Shown: piece after piece, positions 9,287 through 24,200 of the stretch | Numbering within the stretch: the stretch's first letter is position 1 | Layout of the letters: every line of letters starts with the position of its first letter | The notes under the pieces: generated by a model | What the model was told of the DNA's origin: nothing | The model's database searches: none | The model's input: only the letters and a program-made list of their open reading frames with translations | From: Macrostomum lignano | Lineage: Eukaryota | NCBI GenBank assembly: GCA_002269645.1 | Contig: NIVC01002377.1 | Location: 1 to 64,000, forward strand | DNA length: 64,000 bases | Direction of reading: 5' to 3' | Position numbers and translations under genes: made by a program

Positions 9287-12200
9287 CCAGTACGTATACA
9301 CGAAAAAGCGCGCCGATTTCGGTCGCCAATGCATCTTCAGCGACCGACCCTCGGAGCTGCTGGTAGACATCGCGCCCAACCCGGAAGCGCTGAAGGAGTT
9401 CCTCGAGCGCGACCCCGTCGACAGGGCCATCCAAGTAGTCCAGGAGATGAGCGAGCACGATGTGAACACCGAGCGATTTGAGACTGACTCCCATGGCGTC
9501 AATCACGCTGAGGGCGGCTGGCCGAAGGACGTCAATCCGCAGGAGGTAGAACAGGTGATCCGGTTTCGTAAGAAGGTCGAAAAAGACGAAATGTACGTCA
9601 GCACGGTGCAGAACCTCGGCAACCAGATGGAGCACTGCATCAGGCAGAACAACGCTATAGACATCTACCAGGACTACTTCAGCGATATTGAGATTCAAGC
9701 AACGGAAGAGCCGCCCTCCGCCAAGACCATCAACGTGTTCAGAGATCCTTGCAAAGACCGCGGCGTGGCGCACATCAGCTGGTACCCGGATGGGCCAACA
9801 AAGCTGGCCATCGCCTACTGCAACACGGATTTCCAGCGGGCACCGAAGGACACGTCCACCGAGTCCTACCTCTGGGACGTCATCAATCCCAACAAGCCGG
9901 AGCTCGCTCTTAAGCCGGTGTCGCCACTTGTTTGCCTGGAGTACAATCCCAAGGACTCGCACGTCCTGGTTGGAGGTTGCTACAACGGTCAAATTGCCTA
10001 CTGGGACTCAAGGAAAGGTTCGCAACCTGTTGAGTCAACAGAGGTGGCCAACGGACATCGCGATCCGGTGTGGAAAGTGATTTGGAACCAGAGCAAAACC
10101 GGTACAGAGTGCTTCTCAGTGTCCACGGACGGTCAAGTGCTCTGGTGGGACACTCGAAAGCTGTCCGAACCGATCGAACGGCTGTGCCTGGATCCGACAA
10201 AGAAGCAGGACCTGGCCTGCGCTCACGGCGCTTACTCGCTCGAATACGAGCCGACAATTCCCACTAAGTTCATGGCCGGCTCGGAGCAGGGCGCGATTTT
10301 CGCTTGCAACAGGAAAGGCAAAACTGACGCCGATAAAATTGTCGCTGTGTATCCCGGACACATTGGGCCGGTGTACGCCCTGCAGAGGAATCCGCAGTTT
10401 CCTAAGGTGAGCTTATTCTGTCTGTCTGTCTGTCTGTCCATCTGTCTGCTTGTCTGTCTGTCTGTCTGTCCATCTGTCTGTCTGTCTGTCTGTCTGTCTG
10501 TCTGTCTGTCTGTCTGTCTGTCTGTCTGTCTGTCTGTCTGTCTGTCTGTCTGTCTGTCTGTCTGTCTGTCTGTCTGTCTGTCTGTCTGTCTGTCTGTCTG
10601 TCTGTCTGTCTGTCTGTCTGTCTGTCTGTCTGTCTGTCTGTCTGTCTGTCTGTCTGTCTGTCTGTCTGTGTTAGTGTATGTGTGTTTGCGTAGACTCTCC
10701 GTCGGTTTAAAAGCCTCGTTAGCGGGACCTTTCGATTACATGGACCCTTTAAGTGGACCACTTTAAATTTCCTCGATGGGAAGTACAGAGAGGGTTTATC
10801 TTGACTGACTGCATAGTCTGAAAGGCAGCCATTACTGTGGCCAAAGTCCCTCTACTTAAAGTAGTTTAGATTTTAAGTATTGAGTATTTTAGTTTACAAG
10901 GACCTTTAACACAGTCCACCCAAACCACATCGCTGAGGTCCACCTAACCCGAAAACAGACAAATTTCACACATACATAGTGTATGTTTTGTTTGTATGAA
11001 AACTTATTTTTTTATGATATAGCTCTTTAAAATGCGTGTTTAAGCACATTGTGGCATTTTTTAGTTGCAGAAGCAAGCTTACTAAACAGGCCGAAGTGAT
11101 TGGAATGTAAAATAGCTCGTAAAATTGAAGTTTCTGCTACAAACGAAGCTCCGATGTAGCCCATAATGACTAAAAATTCACGAGATGGTTTTATTTATTA
11201 CTTGTGGTTTCTGAAACAAAACTGTTCACTAATAGTCCTGTCGCTATCATACTTGGAATAAATGCTTCATCAAGTGTTGATTTTAGAGAACCTAGATTGA
11301 AGGCTATGCATGACTACATAATTTCTCATGCTGCATTTGCAGCATTGCTTAATTTAAGGAGACATAAAGACAAGAGCCTTGCTTACAGCACGGACTCCTA
11401 AAATAGTTTGTGTGCTTTATATTCAAACGTTTACAGCTTCGGCAACCGATAGGATAGGGCTGGATAATGAAACTTAAAAGCCGAACCATCCTGACTGAGG
11501 TCCAAGCAAACCCCAAAGCTCATCAGCCAATCCTGTGCTTAAGCGGACAGTCAAGAATGGGGTGGTTTAACTTTCATTCCTTACTGTCCGTCCGTTTGAA
11601 CGTTGGTCATTTCCCTCTCTCCCTCCGAAGGGCTCTTATTGGTCTGTAGCTGGCTTAATCATCAAGGTCGAGGGTCTGAAATAGAGGGTCAACGTAAACA
11701 TCTTCCTAATCACAAAAACAGACACCAATTCCCAACCTCAAACAAGACTTTAACTTGAATTAGTTGGCCTCACAAGTTGGTTCTGCCAACTGGTTGTCCT
11801 TAACACGCCAGCATGCAGAAAAAAAGCCCCAAGCTAGTAGGCGTTTCTACGTTGAAAGGATTATCAAGTGCACGAAAAGGAAGCTCTACATAAAGTGGAA
11901 AGGATATTCTAGGTGAGTTTCAAAAGATTTATTCATCACTGCACTCTATTTATTATATATACTAAGAGTTGTTTCCATACGGCCATATCGGTTCGGCTAA
12001 TAAACAGTGCTTCCATATTTTAGCAATCAAAAGTCTTGGGAGCCACGAAGCAACATACCAACAAGTGTGATTCAAAGTCTGCATTCATCTTGCGGTAAGA
12101 ATTTTTAGTCATCACGTGTAATAATCTTATTAAATAATTGACCGTCTAACTTGTGTCAGATAAAAAATGACAATCTAACTCTCTTTCAAAATCTACCAAA

Positions 12201-21200: not shown

Positions 21201-24200
21201 ATTTGGATATTTATAGTTTGATCTAAATGGTTAGGTTTTAGTTTTTTAAAATGAAAACTAATTCTTTCAAATTTTGTCTGAAGCAAGTCAGAATTTACTC
21301 GTGCTTCAGTTTGGCACAATAGTTTTATTTGAACGCCTCTATATGCATGATTTAAACTGTCAGATCGATTGATTCTTTTTTGTTGTGATCGTAAAGATTT
21401 ATATTTAATTGGCTGCCTTTTTTAATTTCTCTGTTAGGTTACAATCGGGAGATGGACAGACTGCGACTTCTAGGCGATTTTCATCACAATATTGCTGTAC
21501 TGAAGGATGAAAAGGACGGTAAAATTATTGTCTGTCGGGAGAAAAGCGTGACCATGGAGTCTACGGAAGTACACACCTATCTTCCTTGTGTTCACTGCTT
21601 TGGATTTTTTACGGACGTGAAATAAGTCGCCACTGAGACCGCTGCAAATTTAGATCTAACTGTTAAAACTGTTAAAAATCTTCGTTGCTCTAGATTTTTA
21701 TATTGGTCCACAGTATATTGGTCCACGTACACCATCATGTTCTAAAGGTCCGTTTAAACCTGGTCTACCTAACAACATAGTTCGAATAGTTTAATTTACT
21801 CGAATTGAAGACCTTTTGAAATTAAAAAGGCAACAGTATTTTCCAAGCGTCTCAAATTAAGCTGGTTCCCCGATTTTCTAACCATAACTAATTGGTCCAC
21901 CTAACGCATTGTCAGAACAACGGTCTATGTAACCACACATACACTAGTATGTCTGTCTGTCTGTCTGTCTGTCTGTCTGTCTGTCTGTCTGTCTGTCTGT
22001 CTGTCTGTCTGTCTGTCTGTCTGTCTGTCTGTCTGTCTGTCTGTCTGTCTGTCTGTCTGTCTGTCTGTCTGTCTGTCTGTCTGTCTGTCTGTCTGTCTGT
22101 CTGTCTGTCTGTCTGTCTGTCTGTCTGTCTGTCTGTCTGTCTGTCTGTGTGTCTGTCTGTCTGTCTGTGTGTCTGTCTGTCTGTCTGTCTGTCTGTCTGT
22201 CTGTATGTCTGCCTGCCTGTCTGTCTGTCTGCCTGCCTGTCTGTCTGTCTGTCTGTCCGTCAGTCTGTATGTCTGTCTGTCTGTCTGTCTGTCTGTCTGT
22301 CTGTCTGTCTGTCTGTCTGTCTTAGTGTCTGTCTGTCTGTCTCTGTCTGTCTGTCTGTCTGTCTGTCTGTCTGTCTGTCTGTCTGTCTGTCTGTCTGTCT
22401 GTCTGTCTGTCTGTCTGTCTGTCTGTCTGTCTGTCTGTCTGTCTGTCTGTCTGTCATTTTGCCCACAGACATCGAGTGCTTGAGATAGACAACCCCCCCC
22501 CCCATCCGCAGGTTTTCATGTCAGTTGGCGACTGGACAGCCCGCATCTGGTCGGAGGACATCAAAGAGAACGCCATCATGTGGACCAAGTATCACCAGTG
22601 CGGCCTCACGGACGGTTGCTGGTCCACCGCCCGACCCGGGGTGTTCTTCACATCGAAAACTGACGGCACCCTGGACGTGTGGGACCTGCTGTTCAAGCAG
22701 AACGACCCGACACTGACTGTGCAGGTTTGCGACGAGCCGCTGCAGTGCCTCCGCTTGCAGGAGCACGGCCGGCTCATGGCCTGCGGCAGCCAGTCGGGAG
22801 TCGCCACCATCGTGGAACTGTCCGAAGGTTTCTACGCGCAAAACCGGAACGAGCGAAATCTGGTGAACGCGATTTTCGAACGGGAAACTCGACGAGAGAA
22901 GATTCTGGAGTCGCGGCATCGCGAGATGAAGCTGAAGGAGAAGAAAGGTGGAGCGGTGAGTTTTTTGGGGAGACTGATACGTCAGCTGACCACCCCGCGA
23001 GCAATTCAGTATGGTCAATTGACCCCTGTGTTGGCGGGAAAACAATGGGTTAGTTGACCCCCCCCCCAAGAAAATCAGGGAGTCAGTTGACCTCCTTCTC
23101 GAGAAAATAAGATCTGGGAGTCAGTTAAATCCTTCTTTTATAGAATCAGGGAGTCAGTTGACCTCCCGTGAAAATTGACCCCGCCATTTGACCCCTCACT
23201 CGTGAAAATCAGGAGGGTCAACTGACCCCCTTGCAAGAAATTCAAGGGAGTCAGCTGAAATCTCGTATATGTTTATGCAAAATCTATATTGAAATGTTAG
23301 ACATAATTTCGAATGCTTAATCCCCTTAGCATTGAACAATTTCTTAGCCACGACACACGTACAGTTTACATGTTTTGTAACTTATTTTGGATTGTTTAAT
23401 AACAGACTAACAAGTTAAAAAAATCGAATTATAAAATGGTCAAACCAACTTCATCTAGCAGAGCGTCAGTGGCAATGAGACACCATTGAGCACTCGAAGT
23501 GCCAAAACGCCCGCTCCGCCGGTAATCTTCTGCTTCTAGGAGCATAAGACTTGGGCTGCCGTTTGTTGTAGATCAAAGTTTCCGCATTTTTGTACACAAA
23601 TTTTCACGGAAAAACCTTCTATTCATCAAATTCACCTGTTTACTGGATCAGAACACGAAAGAAGCAATTTTAGCTTCCTTTAAATAATTTATTTCGATCA
23701 CATGAGCTGCCAGACTAGAGTGAGAAATTCGGAAGATTTTATACAGTTTCACTGATATTAGAAGAATGCAAATCTGGTCAGCTGACCCATAGAGTGGGAT
23801 AGATCCAGGATCAGTGGGTCAGCTGACCCATAGAGTGGGATAGATTCGGGATCAGTGGGTCAGCTGACCCATAGAGTGGGATAGATCCAGGATCAGTGGG
23901 TCAGCTGACCCATAGAGTGGGATAGATTCGGGATCAGTGGGTCAGCTGACCCATAGAGTGATATAGATCCAGGATCAGTGGGTCAGCTGACTCATAGAGT
24001 GGGATAGATTCATGATCAGTGGGTCAGCTGACCCATAGAGTGGGATAGATCCAGGATCAGTGGGTCAGCTGACCCATAGAGTGGGATAGATTCGGGATCA
24101 GTGGGTCAGCTGACCCATAGAGTGATATAGATCCAGGATCAGTGGGTCAGCTGACTCATAGAGTGGGATAGATTCATGATCAGTGGGTCAGCTGACCCAT

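What the first reader, a model, noticed from the sequence alone, without database searches (positions are those of the whole stretch)
10671..21947. 11.3-kb microsatellite-targeting element with recombinase-style ends hidden in DNAI2 intron 1
Seen: a (TCTG)n tract is split in two. The insert starts TTAG|TGTATGTGTG and ends CACACATACA|CTAG, with the imperfect TIR extending to about 24 bp and oppositely oriented GGACC/GGTCC subterminal clusters. Joining the two ends gives CACACATACA-YTAG-TGTATGTGTG, a perfect 10-bp inverted pair around a 4-bp core. Established: this arm-core-arm geometry and short terminal direct repeats are hallmarks of tyrosine-recombinase elements that move via circles (Crypton class), unlike DDE elements with a variable TSD. 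I recall a target-site-specific CryptonV group in Repbase but cannot verify that here. Inference: this is a flatworm Crypton-like family that homes to TCTG/CAGA microsatellites, a safe-harbour niche inside genes.
Basis: partly seen in the sequence, partly recalled or inferred. Interest (0 to 1): 0.9.

Follow-up and report, generated by a model that had tools for sequence, protein, structure and literature searches.

The report
Microsatellite-homing tyrosine-recombinase transposon in a flatworm
The 11.3-kb insert is a broken copy of a young mobile element of the flatworm Macrostomum lignano whose intact copies encode a Cre/Xer-like recombinase and which always lands, in one orientation and one register, inside (TGTC)n microsatellites; this kind of element is known only from a brief database report.

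Summary

- **The insert.** Window 10675-21943 splits a (TCTG)n microsatellite in the first coding intron of DNAI2. It has 13-bp perfect inverted ends, about 21 bp imperfect. GGACC/GGTCC motif clusters lie just inside the ends, in opposite orientations.
- **The protein.** The insert carries the 5' half of a gene. An intact 1184-aa version (PAA76011.1, Macrostomum lignano) has a chromodomain, two zinc-finger-like modules and a tyrosine-recombinase domain with R-K-R-H-Y conserved.
- **The window copy is non-autonomous.** It has two frameshifts, a stop codon and a 2.7-kb deletion that removes the recombinase. An internal satellite-plus-exon module is amplified.
- **Other copies.** Three full-length copies at unrelated loci have base-for-base identical junctions. 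All sit in (TGTC)n, in the same orientation and register.
- **Empty sites.** Two near-identical DNAI2 copies have the same intron with microsatellite only.
- **Distant relatives.** Two families from metagenomes (one 29% identical in protein; the second compared only to the scan query, 45%) end in CACAC(A/T)TACA next to (TG)n.
- **Precedent.** CryptonV, a microsatellite-specific Crypton group from cnidarians, is cited in the literature, so this is a variant of a known kind.
- **Unresolved.** The exact crossover point is open.

The parts
10417..10669 (+). Left flank: (TCTG)n microsatellite of DNAI2 intron, the target
   Evidence: TRF finds 63 copies. The same array, without the element, is present in empty alleles L005 and L006.
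10670..10684 (+). Left junction and end: G-T then the 13-bp terminal inverted repeat TAGTGTATGTGTG. The imperfect repeat runs on to 10695.
   Evidence: The sequence is identical in L001, L002 and L003.
10675..10976 (+). 302-bp left module bounded by inverted 10-mers, with its own right-end-like part (GGTCCACCTAAC 20 bp before CACACATACA). It looks like a miniature element joined head-to-tail to the rest.
   Evidence: Conserved in all four copies.
10967..10989 (+). Internal junction-like palindrome CACACATACA-TAG-TGTATGTTTTG
10725..10941 (+). Left subterminal cluster of GGACC motifs; candidate accessory binding sites
   Evidence: 5 GGWCC in 300 bp against a background of 0.28.
11813..11912 (+). 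Exon 1 of the element's gene (first half of the chromodomain), with a 1-nt deletion in the A-run that shifts the frame
12024..12094 (+). Exon 2 (second half of the chromodomain: [23 protein letters not shown])
12216..12256 (+). Exon 3 ([14 protein letters not shown])
12358..20300 (+). Amplified internal modules. 85-bp satellite arrays (12358-15250, 15872-18085, 18707-19235, 19857-20300) alternate with copies of the 5' part of the acidic exon (ORFs at 13771, 15291, 16604, 18126, 19276).
   Evidence: Module number differs between copies.
20347..21139 (+). Exon encoding the acidic region and first zinc-finger-like module ([21 protein letters not shown]), ending at a GT donor
21438..21660 (+). Stump of the last exon (second zinc-finger-like module). 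It has a 1-nt deletion in a T-run and TGG>TGA, and is cut off by the 2.7-kb deletion that removed the recombinase domain.
21661..21669 (+). Deletion breakpoint filler TGTTAAAAC, a duplicate of the sequence that follows
21705..21905 (+). Right subterminal cluster of GGTCC motifs, inverted relative to the left cluster
21934..21949 (+). Right end: 13-bp terminal inverted repeat CACACATACACTA, then G-TA
21950..22455 (+). Right flank: (TGTC)n microsatellite, the continuation of the target array
9279..10405 (+). Host DNAI2 first coding exon
22513..22980 (+). Host DNAI2 next exon ([13 protein letters not shown]...); the 3' boundary is approximate

Best explanation
**What it is.** Window 10675-21943 is a non-autonomous copy of a young DNA transposon family of Macrostomum lignano. 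Intact 8.8-kb copies carry one spliced gene for a 1184-aa protein. Its parts, in order, are a chromodomain, an acidic region, two C2H2-like zinc-finger modules, a helical core-binding-like domain and a tyrosine-recombinase catalytic domain.

**What is shown.**
- The family inserts into (TGTC)n microsatellites, always in the same orientation and the same 4-bp register.
- The DNAI2 insertion is polymorphic among near-identical gene copies.

**What is inferred.**
- The element excises as a circle.
- The joined ends form a lox-like site: CACACATACACTA - GTATGTGT - TAGTGTATGTGTG (13-8-13).
- The asymmetric spacer and the right arm of this site mimic the microsatellite (spacer GTCTGTCT, arm TGTNTGTNTG).
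- The recombinase carries out a conservative reciprocal crossover within the shared TGT. This yields the observed spacers GTCTGTGT on the left and GTATGTCT on the right.
- The subterminal GGACC/GGTCC motifs would be accessory binding sites. The chromodomain may tether the enzyme to chromatin.

**The window copy.** It lost its recombinase through a 2.7-kb internal deletion, so it could move only if supplied in trans.
For: **Protein**
- A phmmer search with the spliced zinc-finger region finds P0001, 98% identical and 1184 aa. It has a Chromo domain.
- Across 32 family members these motifs are conserved: NRRRxGE, GKRGRKVPVLL, TKLRK, LGH-x8-Y.
- 5 of 32 relatives hit Pfam PF00589, best E-value 2e-7.
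- AlphaFold models have pLDDT 86 and 79. Their top Foldseek PDB hits are only tyrosine recombinases: XerA, XerH, lambda and HP1 integrases, and Cre.
- The full-length element has no other ORF with an enzyme.

**Element copies**
- Copies at four unrelated loci have identical ends and junctions, all in (TGTC)n in the same orientation.
- Their 3' halves are 99.4-99.5% identical.
- (TGTC)n makes up about 2.4% of the 139 kb of M. lignano sequence held here. Four of four insertions in it by chance is about 3e-7.

**Empty sites**
- L005 and L006 have exons 99.5-100% identical to the window. Their intron holds only the array.

**Defects of the window copy**

**Distant relatives**
- L050/L051 (29% protein identity) end in CACACATACA-AGAA-(TG)n, and L050 is flanked by (GT)n on both sides.
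- L044 ends in CACACTTACA-AACGC-(GT)n.

**Literature**
- The Crypton circle and short-core model, and the 11-13 bp arm plus 6-8 bp spacer rule, are in PMC3212892.
- An active Crypton with target CAYCG is described in PMC9977147.
- Microsatellite-specific CryptonV is cited in PMC8869645.
Against: - No circle junction or transposition event was seen; the mechanism is inferred from integrated copies only.
- Only four copies could be examined.
- The structure-search E-values are weak (0.008-0.5). A profile search of PDB sequences found nothing.
- The His of the classical HxxR box is Thr in this family.
- A crossover confined to a 3-bp shared TGT is shorter than the 6-8 bp overlaps usual for this enzyme class.
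- The internal junction-like site (10967-10989) has the compact form arm-TAG-arm, not 13-8-13.
- Because the target is a 4-bp repeat, a hidden target-site duplication of 3, 7 or 11 bp cannot be excluded.
Confidence: 0.8

Rival explanations
1. Same element and enzyme, but with the first reader's geometry. The circle junction is CACACATACA-CTAG-TGTATGTGTG (10-4-10). The crossover lies in the YTAG core. The target is a YTAG-type interruption of the microsatellite, so TTAG/CTAG are the Crypton-style terminal direct repeats.
For: - TTAG and CTAG flank the 10-bp arms.
- The internal junction-like site is arm-TAG-arm.
- In-phase TTAG units recur in (TGTC)n arrays without an element.
- The right junction of L050 reads CACACATACA-AGAA-TGTGTGTGTG, a 10-4-10 look-alike.
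- Cryptons have 4-6 bp terminal direct repeats (PMC3212892).
Against: - The empty DNAI2 alleles have pure (TGTC)n where the element sits. The TTAG unit of allele L005 is still present downstream in the window's array at 22323.
- All four copies share the extra G before TTAG and the extra TA after CTAG. A conservative exchange with a 4-bp core cannot supply these from a pure array.
- TAG/CTA can equally be read as part of a 13-bp inverted repeat.
Confidence: 0.25
2. The element is moved by a DDE cut-and-paste transposase encoded elsewhere, which uses the inverted ends. A 3-bp (TGT) or longer target duplication is hidden in the repeat. The recombinase gene is cargo or serves another purpose.
For: - The element has inverted terminal repeats with subterminal motif clusters, typical of DDE elements.
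- The left flank ends in TGT and the right flank starts with TGT.
- There is a precedent of a Crypton fused to a Mariner and moved by its DDE enzyme (PMC3212892).
- The internal deletion with filler resembles gap-repair products.
Against: - No DDE gene is present in the 8.8-kb full-length copy.
- With a TGT duplication the ends would be asymmetric (GT-TAGTG... versus TAC-TAGTG...).
- Strict orientation and register in a repeat fit a site-specific recombinase better.
- The terminal 10-mer occurs at the right end of the L050/L051 element, whose recombinase is 29% identical; L044 has a one-mismatch version.
- The recombinase catalytic residues are conserved and the ORF is intact in three copies.
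Confidence: 0.05
3. The microsatellites are not a target but belong to the element or are generated by it, for example by slippage from its TGTN-like ends.
For: - The left end TGTG-TTAG-TGTA-TGTG-TGTT-TG is in register with the array and looks like degenerate (TGTN)n.
- Every copy has arrays on both sides.
Against: - Empty alleles carry the array without the element.
- Landmark variant units (CATC, TGCC, TTAG) are shared between empty and filled alleles on the expected sides.
- (TGTC)n arrays exist elsewhere without elements.
Confidence: 0.03

Closest known systems
CryptonV (Kapitonov & Jurka, Repbase Reports 2012, cnidarians), as cited in PMC8869645
   Same: A DNA transposon lineage that encodes a tyrosine recombinase. 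Some of its families insert specifically into microsatellites.
   Different: - The host phylum differs: a flatworm, and other bilaterians for the protein relatives.
- I could not read the Repbase report or obtain its sequences. It is therefore unknown whether the recombinases are the same clade.
- It is likewise unknown whether CryptonV has inverted ends, a chromodomain or zinc fingers.
Cryptons in general (CryptonF/S/A/I; Goodwin 2003; Kojima & Jurka 2011, PMC3212892)
   Same: - A single recombinase gene and no reverse transcriptase.
- Short direct repeats at the ends (here YTAG).
- Non-autonomous deletion derivatives occur.
- The proposed route is a circular intermediate with site-specific integration.
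   Different: - Described Cryptons lack terminal inverted repeats, and animal Cryptons have no terminal repeats at all. This family has 13-bp perfect inverted ends plus subterminal motif clusters.
- There is no detectable similarity to the Crypton-derived DUF3504 domain at E<=0.1.
- The chromodomain and zinc-finger N-terminus is not described for them.
- Platyhelminthes is not among the six animal phyla listed in 2011.
Cre-loxP / Flp-FRT and Xer-dif site-specific recombination
   Same: - The catalytic fold and the R-K-R-H-Y residues match.
- The joined ends give a 13-8-13 inverted-repeat site with an asymmetric spacer. This is the loxP/FRT layout (my knowledge, plus for the 11-13 / 6-8 rule).
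   Different: - It is a eukaryotic chromosomal transposon.
- The partner site is a simple-sequence repeat that matches only the spacer (6 of 8) and one arm (8 of 13).
- The large N-terminal extension is absent from Cre and Xer.
Tyrosine recombinases of endogenous nimaviruses (PMC10871703)
   Same: They have a C2H2 zinc-binding domain, a SAM-like domain and a recombinase domain. They integrate specifically into a short tandem repeat, (TAACC)n, or into 28S rDNA.
   Different: - They are carried by giant viral genomes, not by an 8.8-kb single-gene element.
- Their target is the telomeric pentamer.
- Homology was not tested, and IMG/VR holds no relative of this family.
Microsatellite-specific non-LTR retrotransposons (for example R4/Dong-type; Kojima & Fujiwara 2004, cited in PMC8869645)
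   Same: They occupy the same genomic niche: simple repeats used as a harmless landing site.
   Different: They are RNA-mediated and use an endonuclease plus reverse transcriptase. The element here has no reverse transcriptase.

Membership tests
Tyrosine recombinase superfamily (Pfam PF00589-like) | Catalytic residues Arg-I, Lys (beta-hairpin), His-II/Arg-II (HxxR), His/Trp-III and the Tyr nucleophile | tested here: met
   R279, K328, R400, H426 and Y435 (numbering of the 475-aa query) are invariant or nearly invariant in 32 sequences. His-II is Thr (STKLRK).
Tyrosine recombinase superfamily (Pfam PF00589-like) | Significant match to the family profile or fold | tested here: inconclusive
   - P0001 itself gives no Pfam hit.
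- 5 of 32 relatives hit PF00589, best E-value 2e-7.
- The Foldseek top hits are exclusively tyrosine recombinases, but at E 0.008-0.5.
- A PDB sequence-profile search found nothing.
Crypton superfamily | A DNA element whose only enzyme is a tyrosine recombinase; no reverse transcriptase and no long terminal repeats | tested here: met
   The full-length copy L001 8873-17644 has one gene. The other ORFs of 100 aa or more have no enzyme domain, and the ends share no direct repeat.
Crypton superfamily | No terminal inverted repeats; 4-6 bp direct repeats at the termini (PMC3212892) | tested here: not met
   A 13-bp perfect inverted repeat, about 21 bp imperfect, is present. A 4-bp imperfect direct repeat TTAG/CTAG is also present.
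Crypton superfamily | The recombinase groups with CryptonA/F/I/S/V in a phylogeny | not testable with these tools
   No Repbase sequences are available. There is no DUF3504 (PF12012) hit at E<=0.1 in 32 members.
CryptonV | Insertion specifically in microsatellites | tested here: met
   - 4 of 4 M. lignano copies lie in (TGTC)n with identical junctions.
- Empty alleles exist.
- Relatives L050/L051/L044 lie next to (TG)n.
CryptonV | Sequence relationship to the Repbase CryptonV recombinases | not testable with these tools
   The Repbase report is not in the library and is known only by citation.
DDE cut-and-paste transposons | Encodes a DDE/DDD transposase | tested here: not met
   No such ORF is present in the full-length copy. 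Pfam on P0001 finds only Chromo.
DIRS/Ngaro retrotransposons | Reverse transcriptase/RNase H alongside the recombinase | tested here: not met
   The element has a single gene and no RT.

The most novel reading that the evidence does not exclude
This may be a previously undescribed, widespread animal lineage of tyrosine-recombinase transposons. Relatives occur in flatworm, sea slugs, bivalves, echinoderms, insects and many fishes, all annotated only as 'uncharacterized protein'.

Its members would carry lox-like inverted ends with a conserved TGTATGTGTG arm. That arm mimics TG-type microsatellites and would direct orientation-specific, register-specific integration into them.

The M. lignano family is apparently still active and is fused to a chromodomain. 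It would then be a natural site-specific integrase that works in metazoan chromatin.
Probability: 0.3. Interest if true: 0.75.

Novelty: new variant of a known kind. Interest (0 to 1): 0.6.

Why it matters
- **Mechanism.** Cryptons are the least understood class of eukaryotic DNA transposons. Activity was first seen only in 2023, in Chlamydomonas (PMC9977147). Their ends are usually too cryptic to define a recombination site.
- **A usable system.** This family has sharply defined ends and an invariant junction. It has filled and empty alleles, intact and defective copies, and a genetically tractable host. The circle-and-crossover model becomes directly testable.
- **Safe landing.** The element sits in an essential cilia gene's intron, inside a simple repeat. 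This shows how a transposon can live inside genes at little apparent cost.
- **Possible tool.** A recombinase that natively integrates DNA at a defined repeat in animal chromatin could be a candidate tool for targeted insertion.

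Tried and rejected
- **Word-indexed homologue search.** A search with the 328-aa spliced ORF found nothing. The exhaustive phmmer search was needed.
- **Exact-protein look-ups.** Look-ups of the window's own ORFs found no contigs. The look-up of P0010, a second M. 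lignano family, also failed.
- **Other copies in the window.** BLAST of the element's ends against the window found none.
- **Intron created by the insertion.** I considered that splice sites might come from a duplicated AGGT. I rejected this because the homeolog L004 and the empty alleles have the intron.
- **Tc1/mariner-like TA duplication, or piggyBac/Kolobok-like TTAA-type duplication.** I rejected these because a pure (TGTC)n array has no TA, and there is no DDE gene.
- **LTR element.** Rejected because the ends share no direct similarity.
- **PDB profile searches.** Neither the whole C-terminal region nor the catalytic domain gave a recombinase hit.
- **IMG/VR.** The scan found no relatives.
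- **Metagenome scan.** The first attempt failed for lack of conserved columns and was repeated with a tighter alignment.
- **Excision footprint.** A fuzzy search for TGTGTTAGTATG-type footprints was uninformative, because the pattern matches the plain array.
- **Two distant relatives.** L007 and L008 showed no clear flanking microsatellites.

Full report
**1. The observation.**
A (TCTG)n array (10417-10669) and a (TGTC)n array (21950-22455) lie in the same phase family and on the same strand, and they flank an 11.27-kb insert.

- The left junction reads ...TGTCTGTGT/TAGTGTATGTGTGTTTGCGTAGAC.
- The right junction reads GTCTATGTAACCACACATACACTA/GTATGTCTGTC.
- The 13-mer TAGTGTATGTGTG occurs exactly twice in 64 kb, at the two ends and in inverted orientation; 0.03 matches are expected.
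- The inverted repeat continues imperfectly to 18 of 21 bases.
- GGWCC motifs are about 16-fold enriched in the terminal 300 bp on each side. They are GGACC on the left and GGTCC on the right.
- The host exon at 9279-10405 is a WD40 dynein intermediate chain, 100% identical to M. lignano PAA58417.1 and 64-74% identical to DNAI2/IC3 of other animals. The next exon starts at 22513.

**2. What the insert carries.**
About 8 kb of the interior is tandem structure. Four arrays of an 85-bp satellite alternate with repeated copies of the 5' part of one exon. Outside these arrays there is a spliced gene on the + strand.

- Two short exons encode a chromodomain (11813-11912 and 12024-12094).
- A third small exon lies at 12216-12256.
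- An acidic exon (20347-21139) ends in a zinc-finger-like module.
- A last-exon stump (21438-21660) holds a second module.

The word-indexed homologue search found nothing. An exhaustive phmmer search with the spliced zinc-finger region found 1088 relatives. The best is a 1184-aa M. lignano protein, 98% identical (P0001 = PAA76011.1).

**3. The protein is a tyrosine recombinase.**
P0001 has a Pfam Chromo domain at its N-terminus. Its C-terminal ~450 residues define a family found in fishes, molluscs, echinoderms and insects, everywhere annotated as hypothetical.

- An alignment of 32 members shows the recombinase signature: NRRRxGE (Arg-I), IRGKRGRKVPVLL (hairpin Lys), STKLRK (Arg-II, with Thr where His-II usually sits) and LGHxxxVHxxFYR (His-III and the Tyr nucleophile nine residues later).
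- Five of the 32 hit Pfam Phage_integrase, best E-value 2e-7.
- AlphaFold models of the whole region (pLDDT 86) and of the catalytic domain (pLDDT 79) were searched against the PDB. The top hits are only XerA, XerH, lambda and HP1 integrases and Cre, followed by noise. E-values are modest, 0.008-0.5.
- Sequence-profile searches of the PDB found nothing.

I take the assignment as secure at about 0.9.

**4. Other copies.**
The protein look-ups returned three full-length copies from assembly GCA_002269645.1. These are L001 (8772 bp), L002 (15.9 kb) and L003 (38.4 kb).

- All have the same ends and base-for-base identical junctions. These are TGTCTGTCTGTGT|TAGTGTATGTGTG and CACACATACACTA|GTATGTCT GTCTGTC. 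All lie in (TGTC)n on the same strand as the element's gene.
- The sequence beyond the arrays shares no similarity between loci, so these are independent insertions.
- The size differences come from the number of satellite-plus-exon modules.
- The 3' 4.8 kb is 99.4-99.5% identical among the full-length copies.
- The full-length element contains only this one gene.
- (TGTC)n occupies about 2.4% of the 139 kb of M. lignano sequence held here, counting the target arrays themselves. Four of four insertions in it, in one orientation and one register, is far beyond chance.

**5. The window copy is defective.**
Relative to L001 it lacks positions 5779-8510, which include the whole recombinase domain. 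The breakpoint is at 21660/21661 and has a 9-bp filler. There is also a 1-nt deletion in the exon-1 A-run, a 1-nt deletion in a T-run, and TGG>TGA in the last exon.

**6. Empty sites.**
Two further copies of the DNAI2 locus (L005 and L006) have exons 99.5-100% identical to the window. Their intron starts with the same gtgagcttat and ends with the same attttgcccacag...ccgcag, and contains only (TCTG)n.

Landmark variant units are shared in the expected order. CATC lies 5' of the insertion point; TGCC and one TTAG lie 3' of it. So the element sits in the pure part of a pre-existing array. The microsatellite is therefore the target, not part of the element. The insertion is polymorphic among recently diverged gene copies. 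A more distant homeolog (89% protein identity) has the intron filled by a 23-bp satellite instead.

**7. How it probably works.**
*Shown:* a single-gene recombinase element, with strict target, orientation and register.

*Inferred:* because the empty alleles are pure array, the nucleotides G-TTAG on the left and CTAG-TA on the right must travel with the element.

- Joining the ends around one shared TGT gives CACACATACACTA-GTATGTGT-TAGTGTATGTGTG. This is 13-bp perfect inverted arms around an 8-bp asymmetric spacer, the layout of loxP and FRT. It lies within the 11-13 / 6-8 rule quoted in PMC3212892.
- The array offers the spacer GTCTGTCT (6 of 8 identical) and a right arm GTCTGTCTGTCTG (8 of 13).
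- The observed left spacer GTCTGTGT and right spacer GTATGTCT are exactly the two reciprocal recombinants of a crossover within the central TGT.
- This accounts for the fixed orientation, the fixed register and the invariant junctions without any true target duplication.

The weak points are these.
- No circle has been seen.
- A 3-bp exchange region is short for this enzyme class.
- The element contains an internal arm-TAG-arm site (10967-10989), conserved in all copies.
- In-phase TTAG units recur in element-free arrays. My model does not explain them.

**8. Relatives elsewhere.**
A metagenome scan returned 80 loci of the family.

- In L050, a 12.2-kb single-gene element whose protein is 29% identical to P0001 over 605 residues is flanked by (GT)n on both sides. 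It ends ...GGTCACACATACA-AGAA-(TG)n, the same terminal 10-mer as in the flatworm. Its left end, TGTGTGTGGG-TTTGTAAGACC, parallels TGTATGTGTG-TTTGCGTAGAC.
- L051 shows the same right end followed by (TG)15 and then unique sequence.
- L044, another family, ends CACACTTACA-AACGC-(GT)16.
- Two other relatives showed nothing clear.

The TGTNTGTNTG arm and TG-type microsatellite targets therefore seem to be old features of the lineage. This rests on few loci.

**9. Comparison with what is known.**
- Cryptons are defined by a tyrosine recombinase as sole enzyme. They are described as lacking inverted terminal repeats, with 4-6 bp terminal direct repeats, and animal Cryptons have no terminal repeats at all (PMC3212892).
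- An active Crypton in Chlamydomonas integrates by matching a 5-bp terminus to a CAYCG target (PMC9977147).
[quoted passage not shown] This cites a 2012 Repbase Report on cnidarians (PMC8869645).
- Nimaviral recombinases with C2H2 and SAM-like domains target (TAACC)n (PMC10871703).
- No paper in the library links Macrostomum with Cryptons in substance.

The element works like a Crypton, and specifically like CryptonV. It fails the 'no inverted repeats' descriptor, and its clade membership is untestable here. I therefore file it as a new variant of a known kind.

**10. Verdict.**
The finding is real, biologically coherent and of moderate to high interest. It is not categorically new.

Noticed in passing
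window 12358-20300; L001 10548-13288; L003 8876-47281: Inside the element, a module of 85-bp satellite plus a copy of the 5' part of one exon is tandemly amplified to very different degrees: 3 modules in L001, 6 in the window and about 25 in L003. Copies therefore range from 8.8 to 38 kb. This is a transposon-borne satellite expanding inside an intron of the transposon's own gene.
   Followed up: partly
window 22323; window 27367-27420 (minus strand); L002 ~1570; L005 4319: In-phase TTAG units replace TGTC units in (TGTC)n arrays that hold no element. At one array start they alternate: TGTC-TTAG-TGTC-TTAG-TGTC-TTAG. TTAG differs from TGTC at three of four bases and matches the element's left junction tetramer. 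They could be scars of earlier visits, preferred sites or mere slippage.
   Followed up: partly
window 10967-10989 (also L001 9165-9187): A near-palindrome CACACATACA-TAG-TGTATGTTTTG lies 300 bp inside the left end, preceded by the same GGTCCACCTAAC motif as the true right end. It looks like the junction of a head-to-tail dimer of a mini-element and the main element.
   Followed up: partly
window 10406-22512; L004 5097-7318: Without the element, this DNAI2 intron is almost entirely microsatellite (about 300-600 bp). In the 89%-identical homeolog the same intron is filled by 2.2 kb of a 23-bp satellite.
   Followed up: partly
whole window (for example 4094-4527, 23776-24452, 37677-38243, 40196-41560, 43752-44918, 47196-47911, 52415-53064, 62253-62826): The window is unusually dense in tandem repeats with periods of 9-56 bp (61 TRF rows). 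Many lie between the long exons of neighbouring genes.
   Followed up: no
P0010 / P0358 (UniRef A0A1I8J1L2, A0A1I8JFG5): M. lignano has a second, diverged family of the same recombinase (58% identical in the zinc-finger region, no chromodomain at the start). Its genomic context could not be fetched.
   Followed up: partly
P0002 (Elysia marginata GFR96692.1, 4571 aa): A sea-slug protein annotated as 'circumsporozoite protein' matches the zinc-finger module nine times. It is probably a gene model fused across several copies of a related element.
   Followed up: no
L050 895-13111; L051 8403-8446; L044 5240-5293: Metagenome contigs from unknown animal hosts carry distant relatives whose right ends are CACAC(A/T)TACA followed within 4-5 bases by (TG)n. 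L050 is flanked by (GT)n on both sides.
   Followed up: partly
P0001 residues ~1120-1184: The C-terminus (VHVKWSEEEDAAFKRVFDRMLEE...) looks like a Myb/SANT-type DNA-binding motif. Pfam did not report it at E<=0.1.
   Followed up: no
window 560-2647; 34549-36288, 46685-47212, 51586-52287; 60990-63451: The neighbouring genes appear to be a PHD-finger protein, a metabotropic-glutamate-receptor-like gene split by long repeat-filled introns, and an XPD/ERCC2-like helicase. These were judged from the ORF translations only.
   Followed up: no
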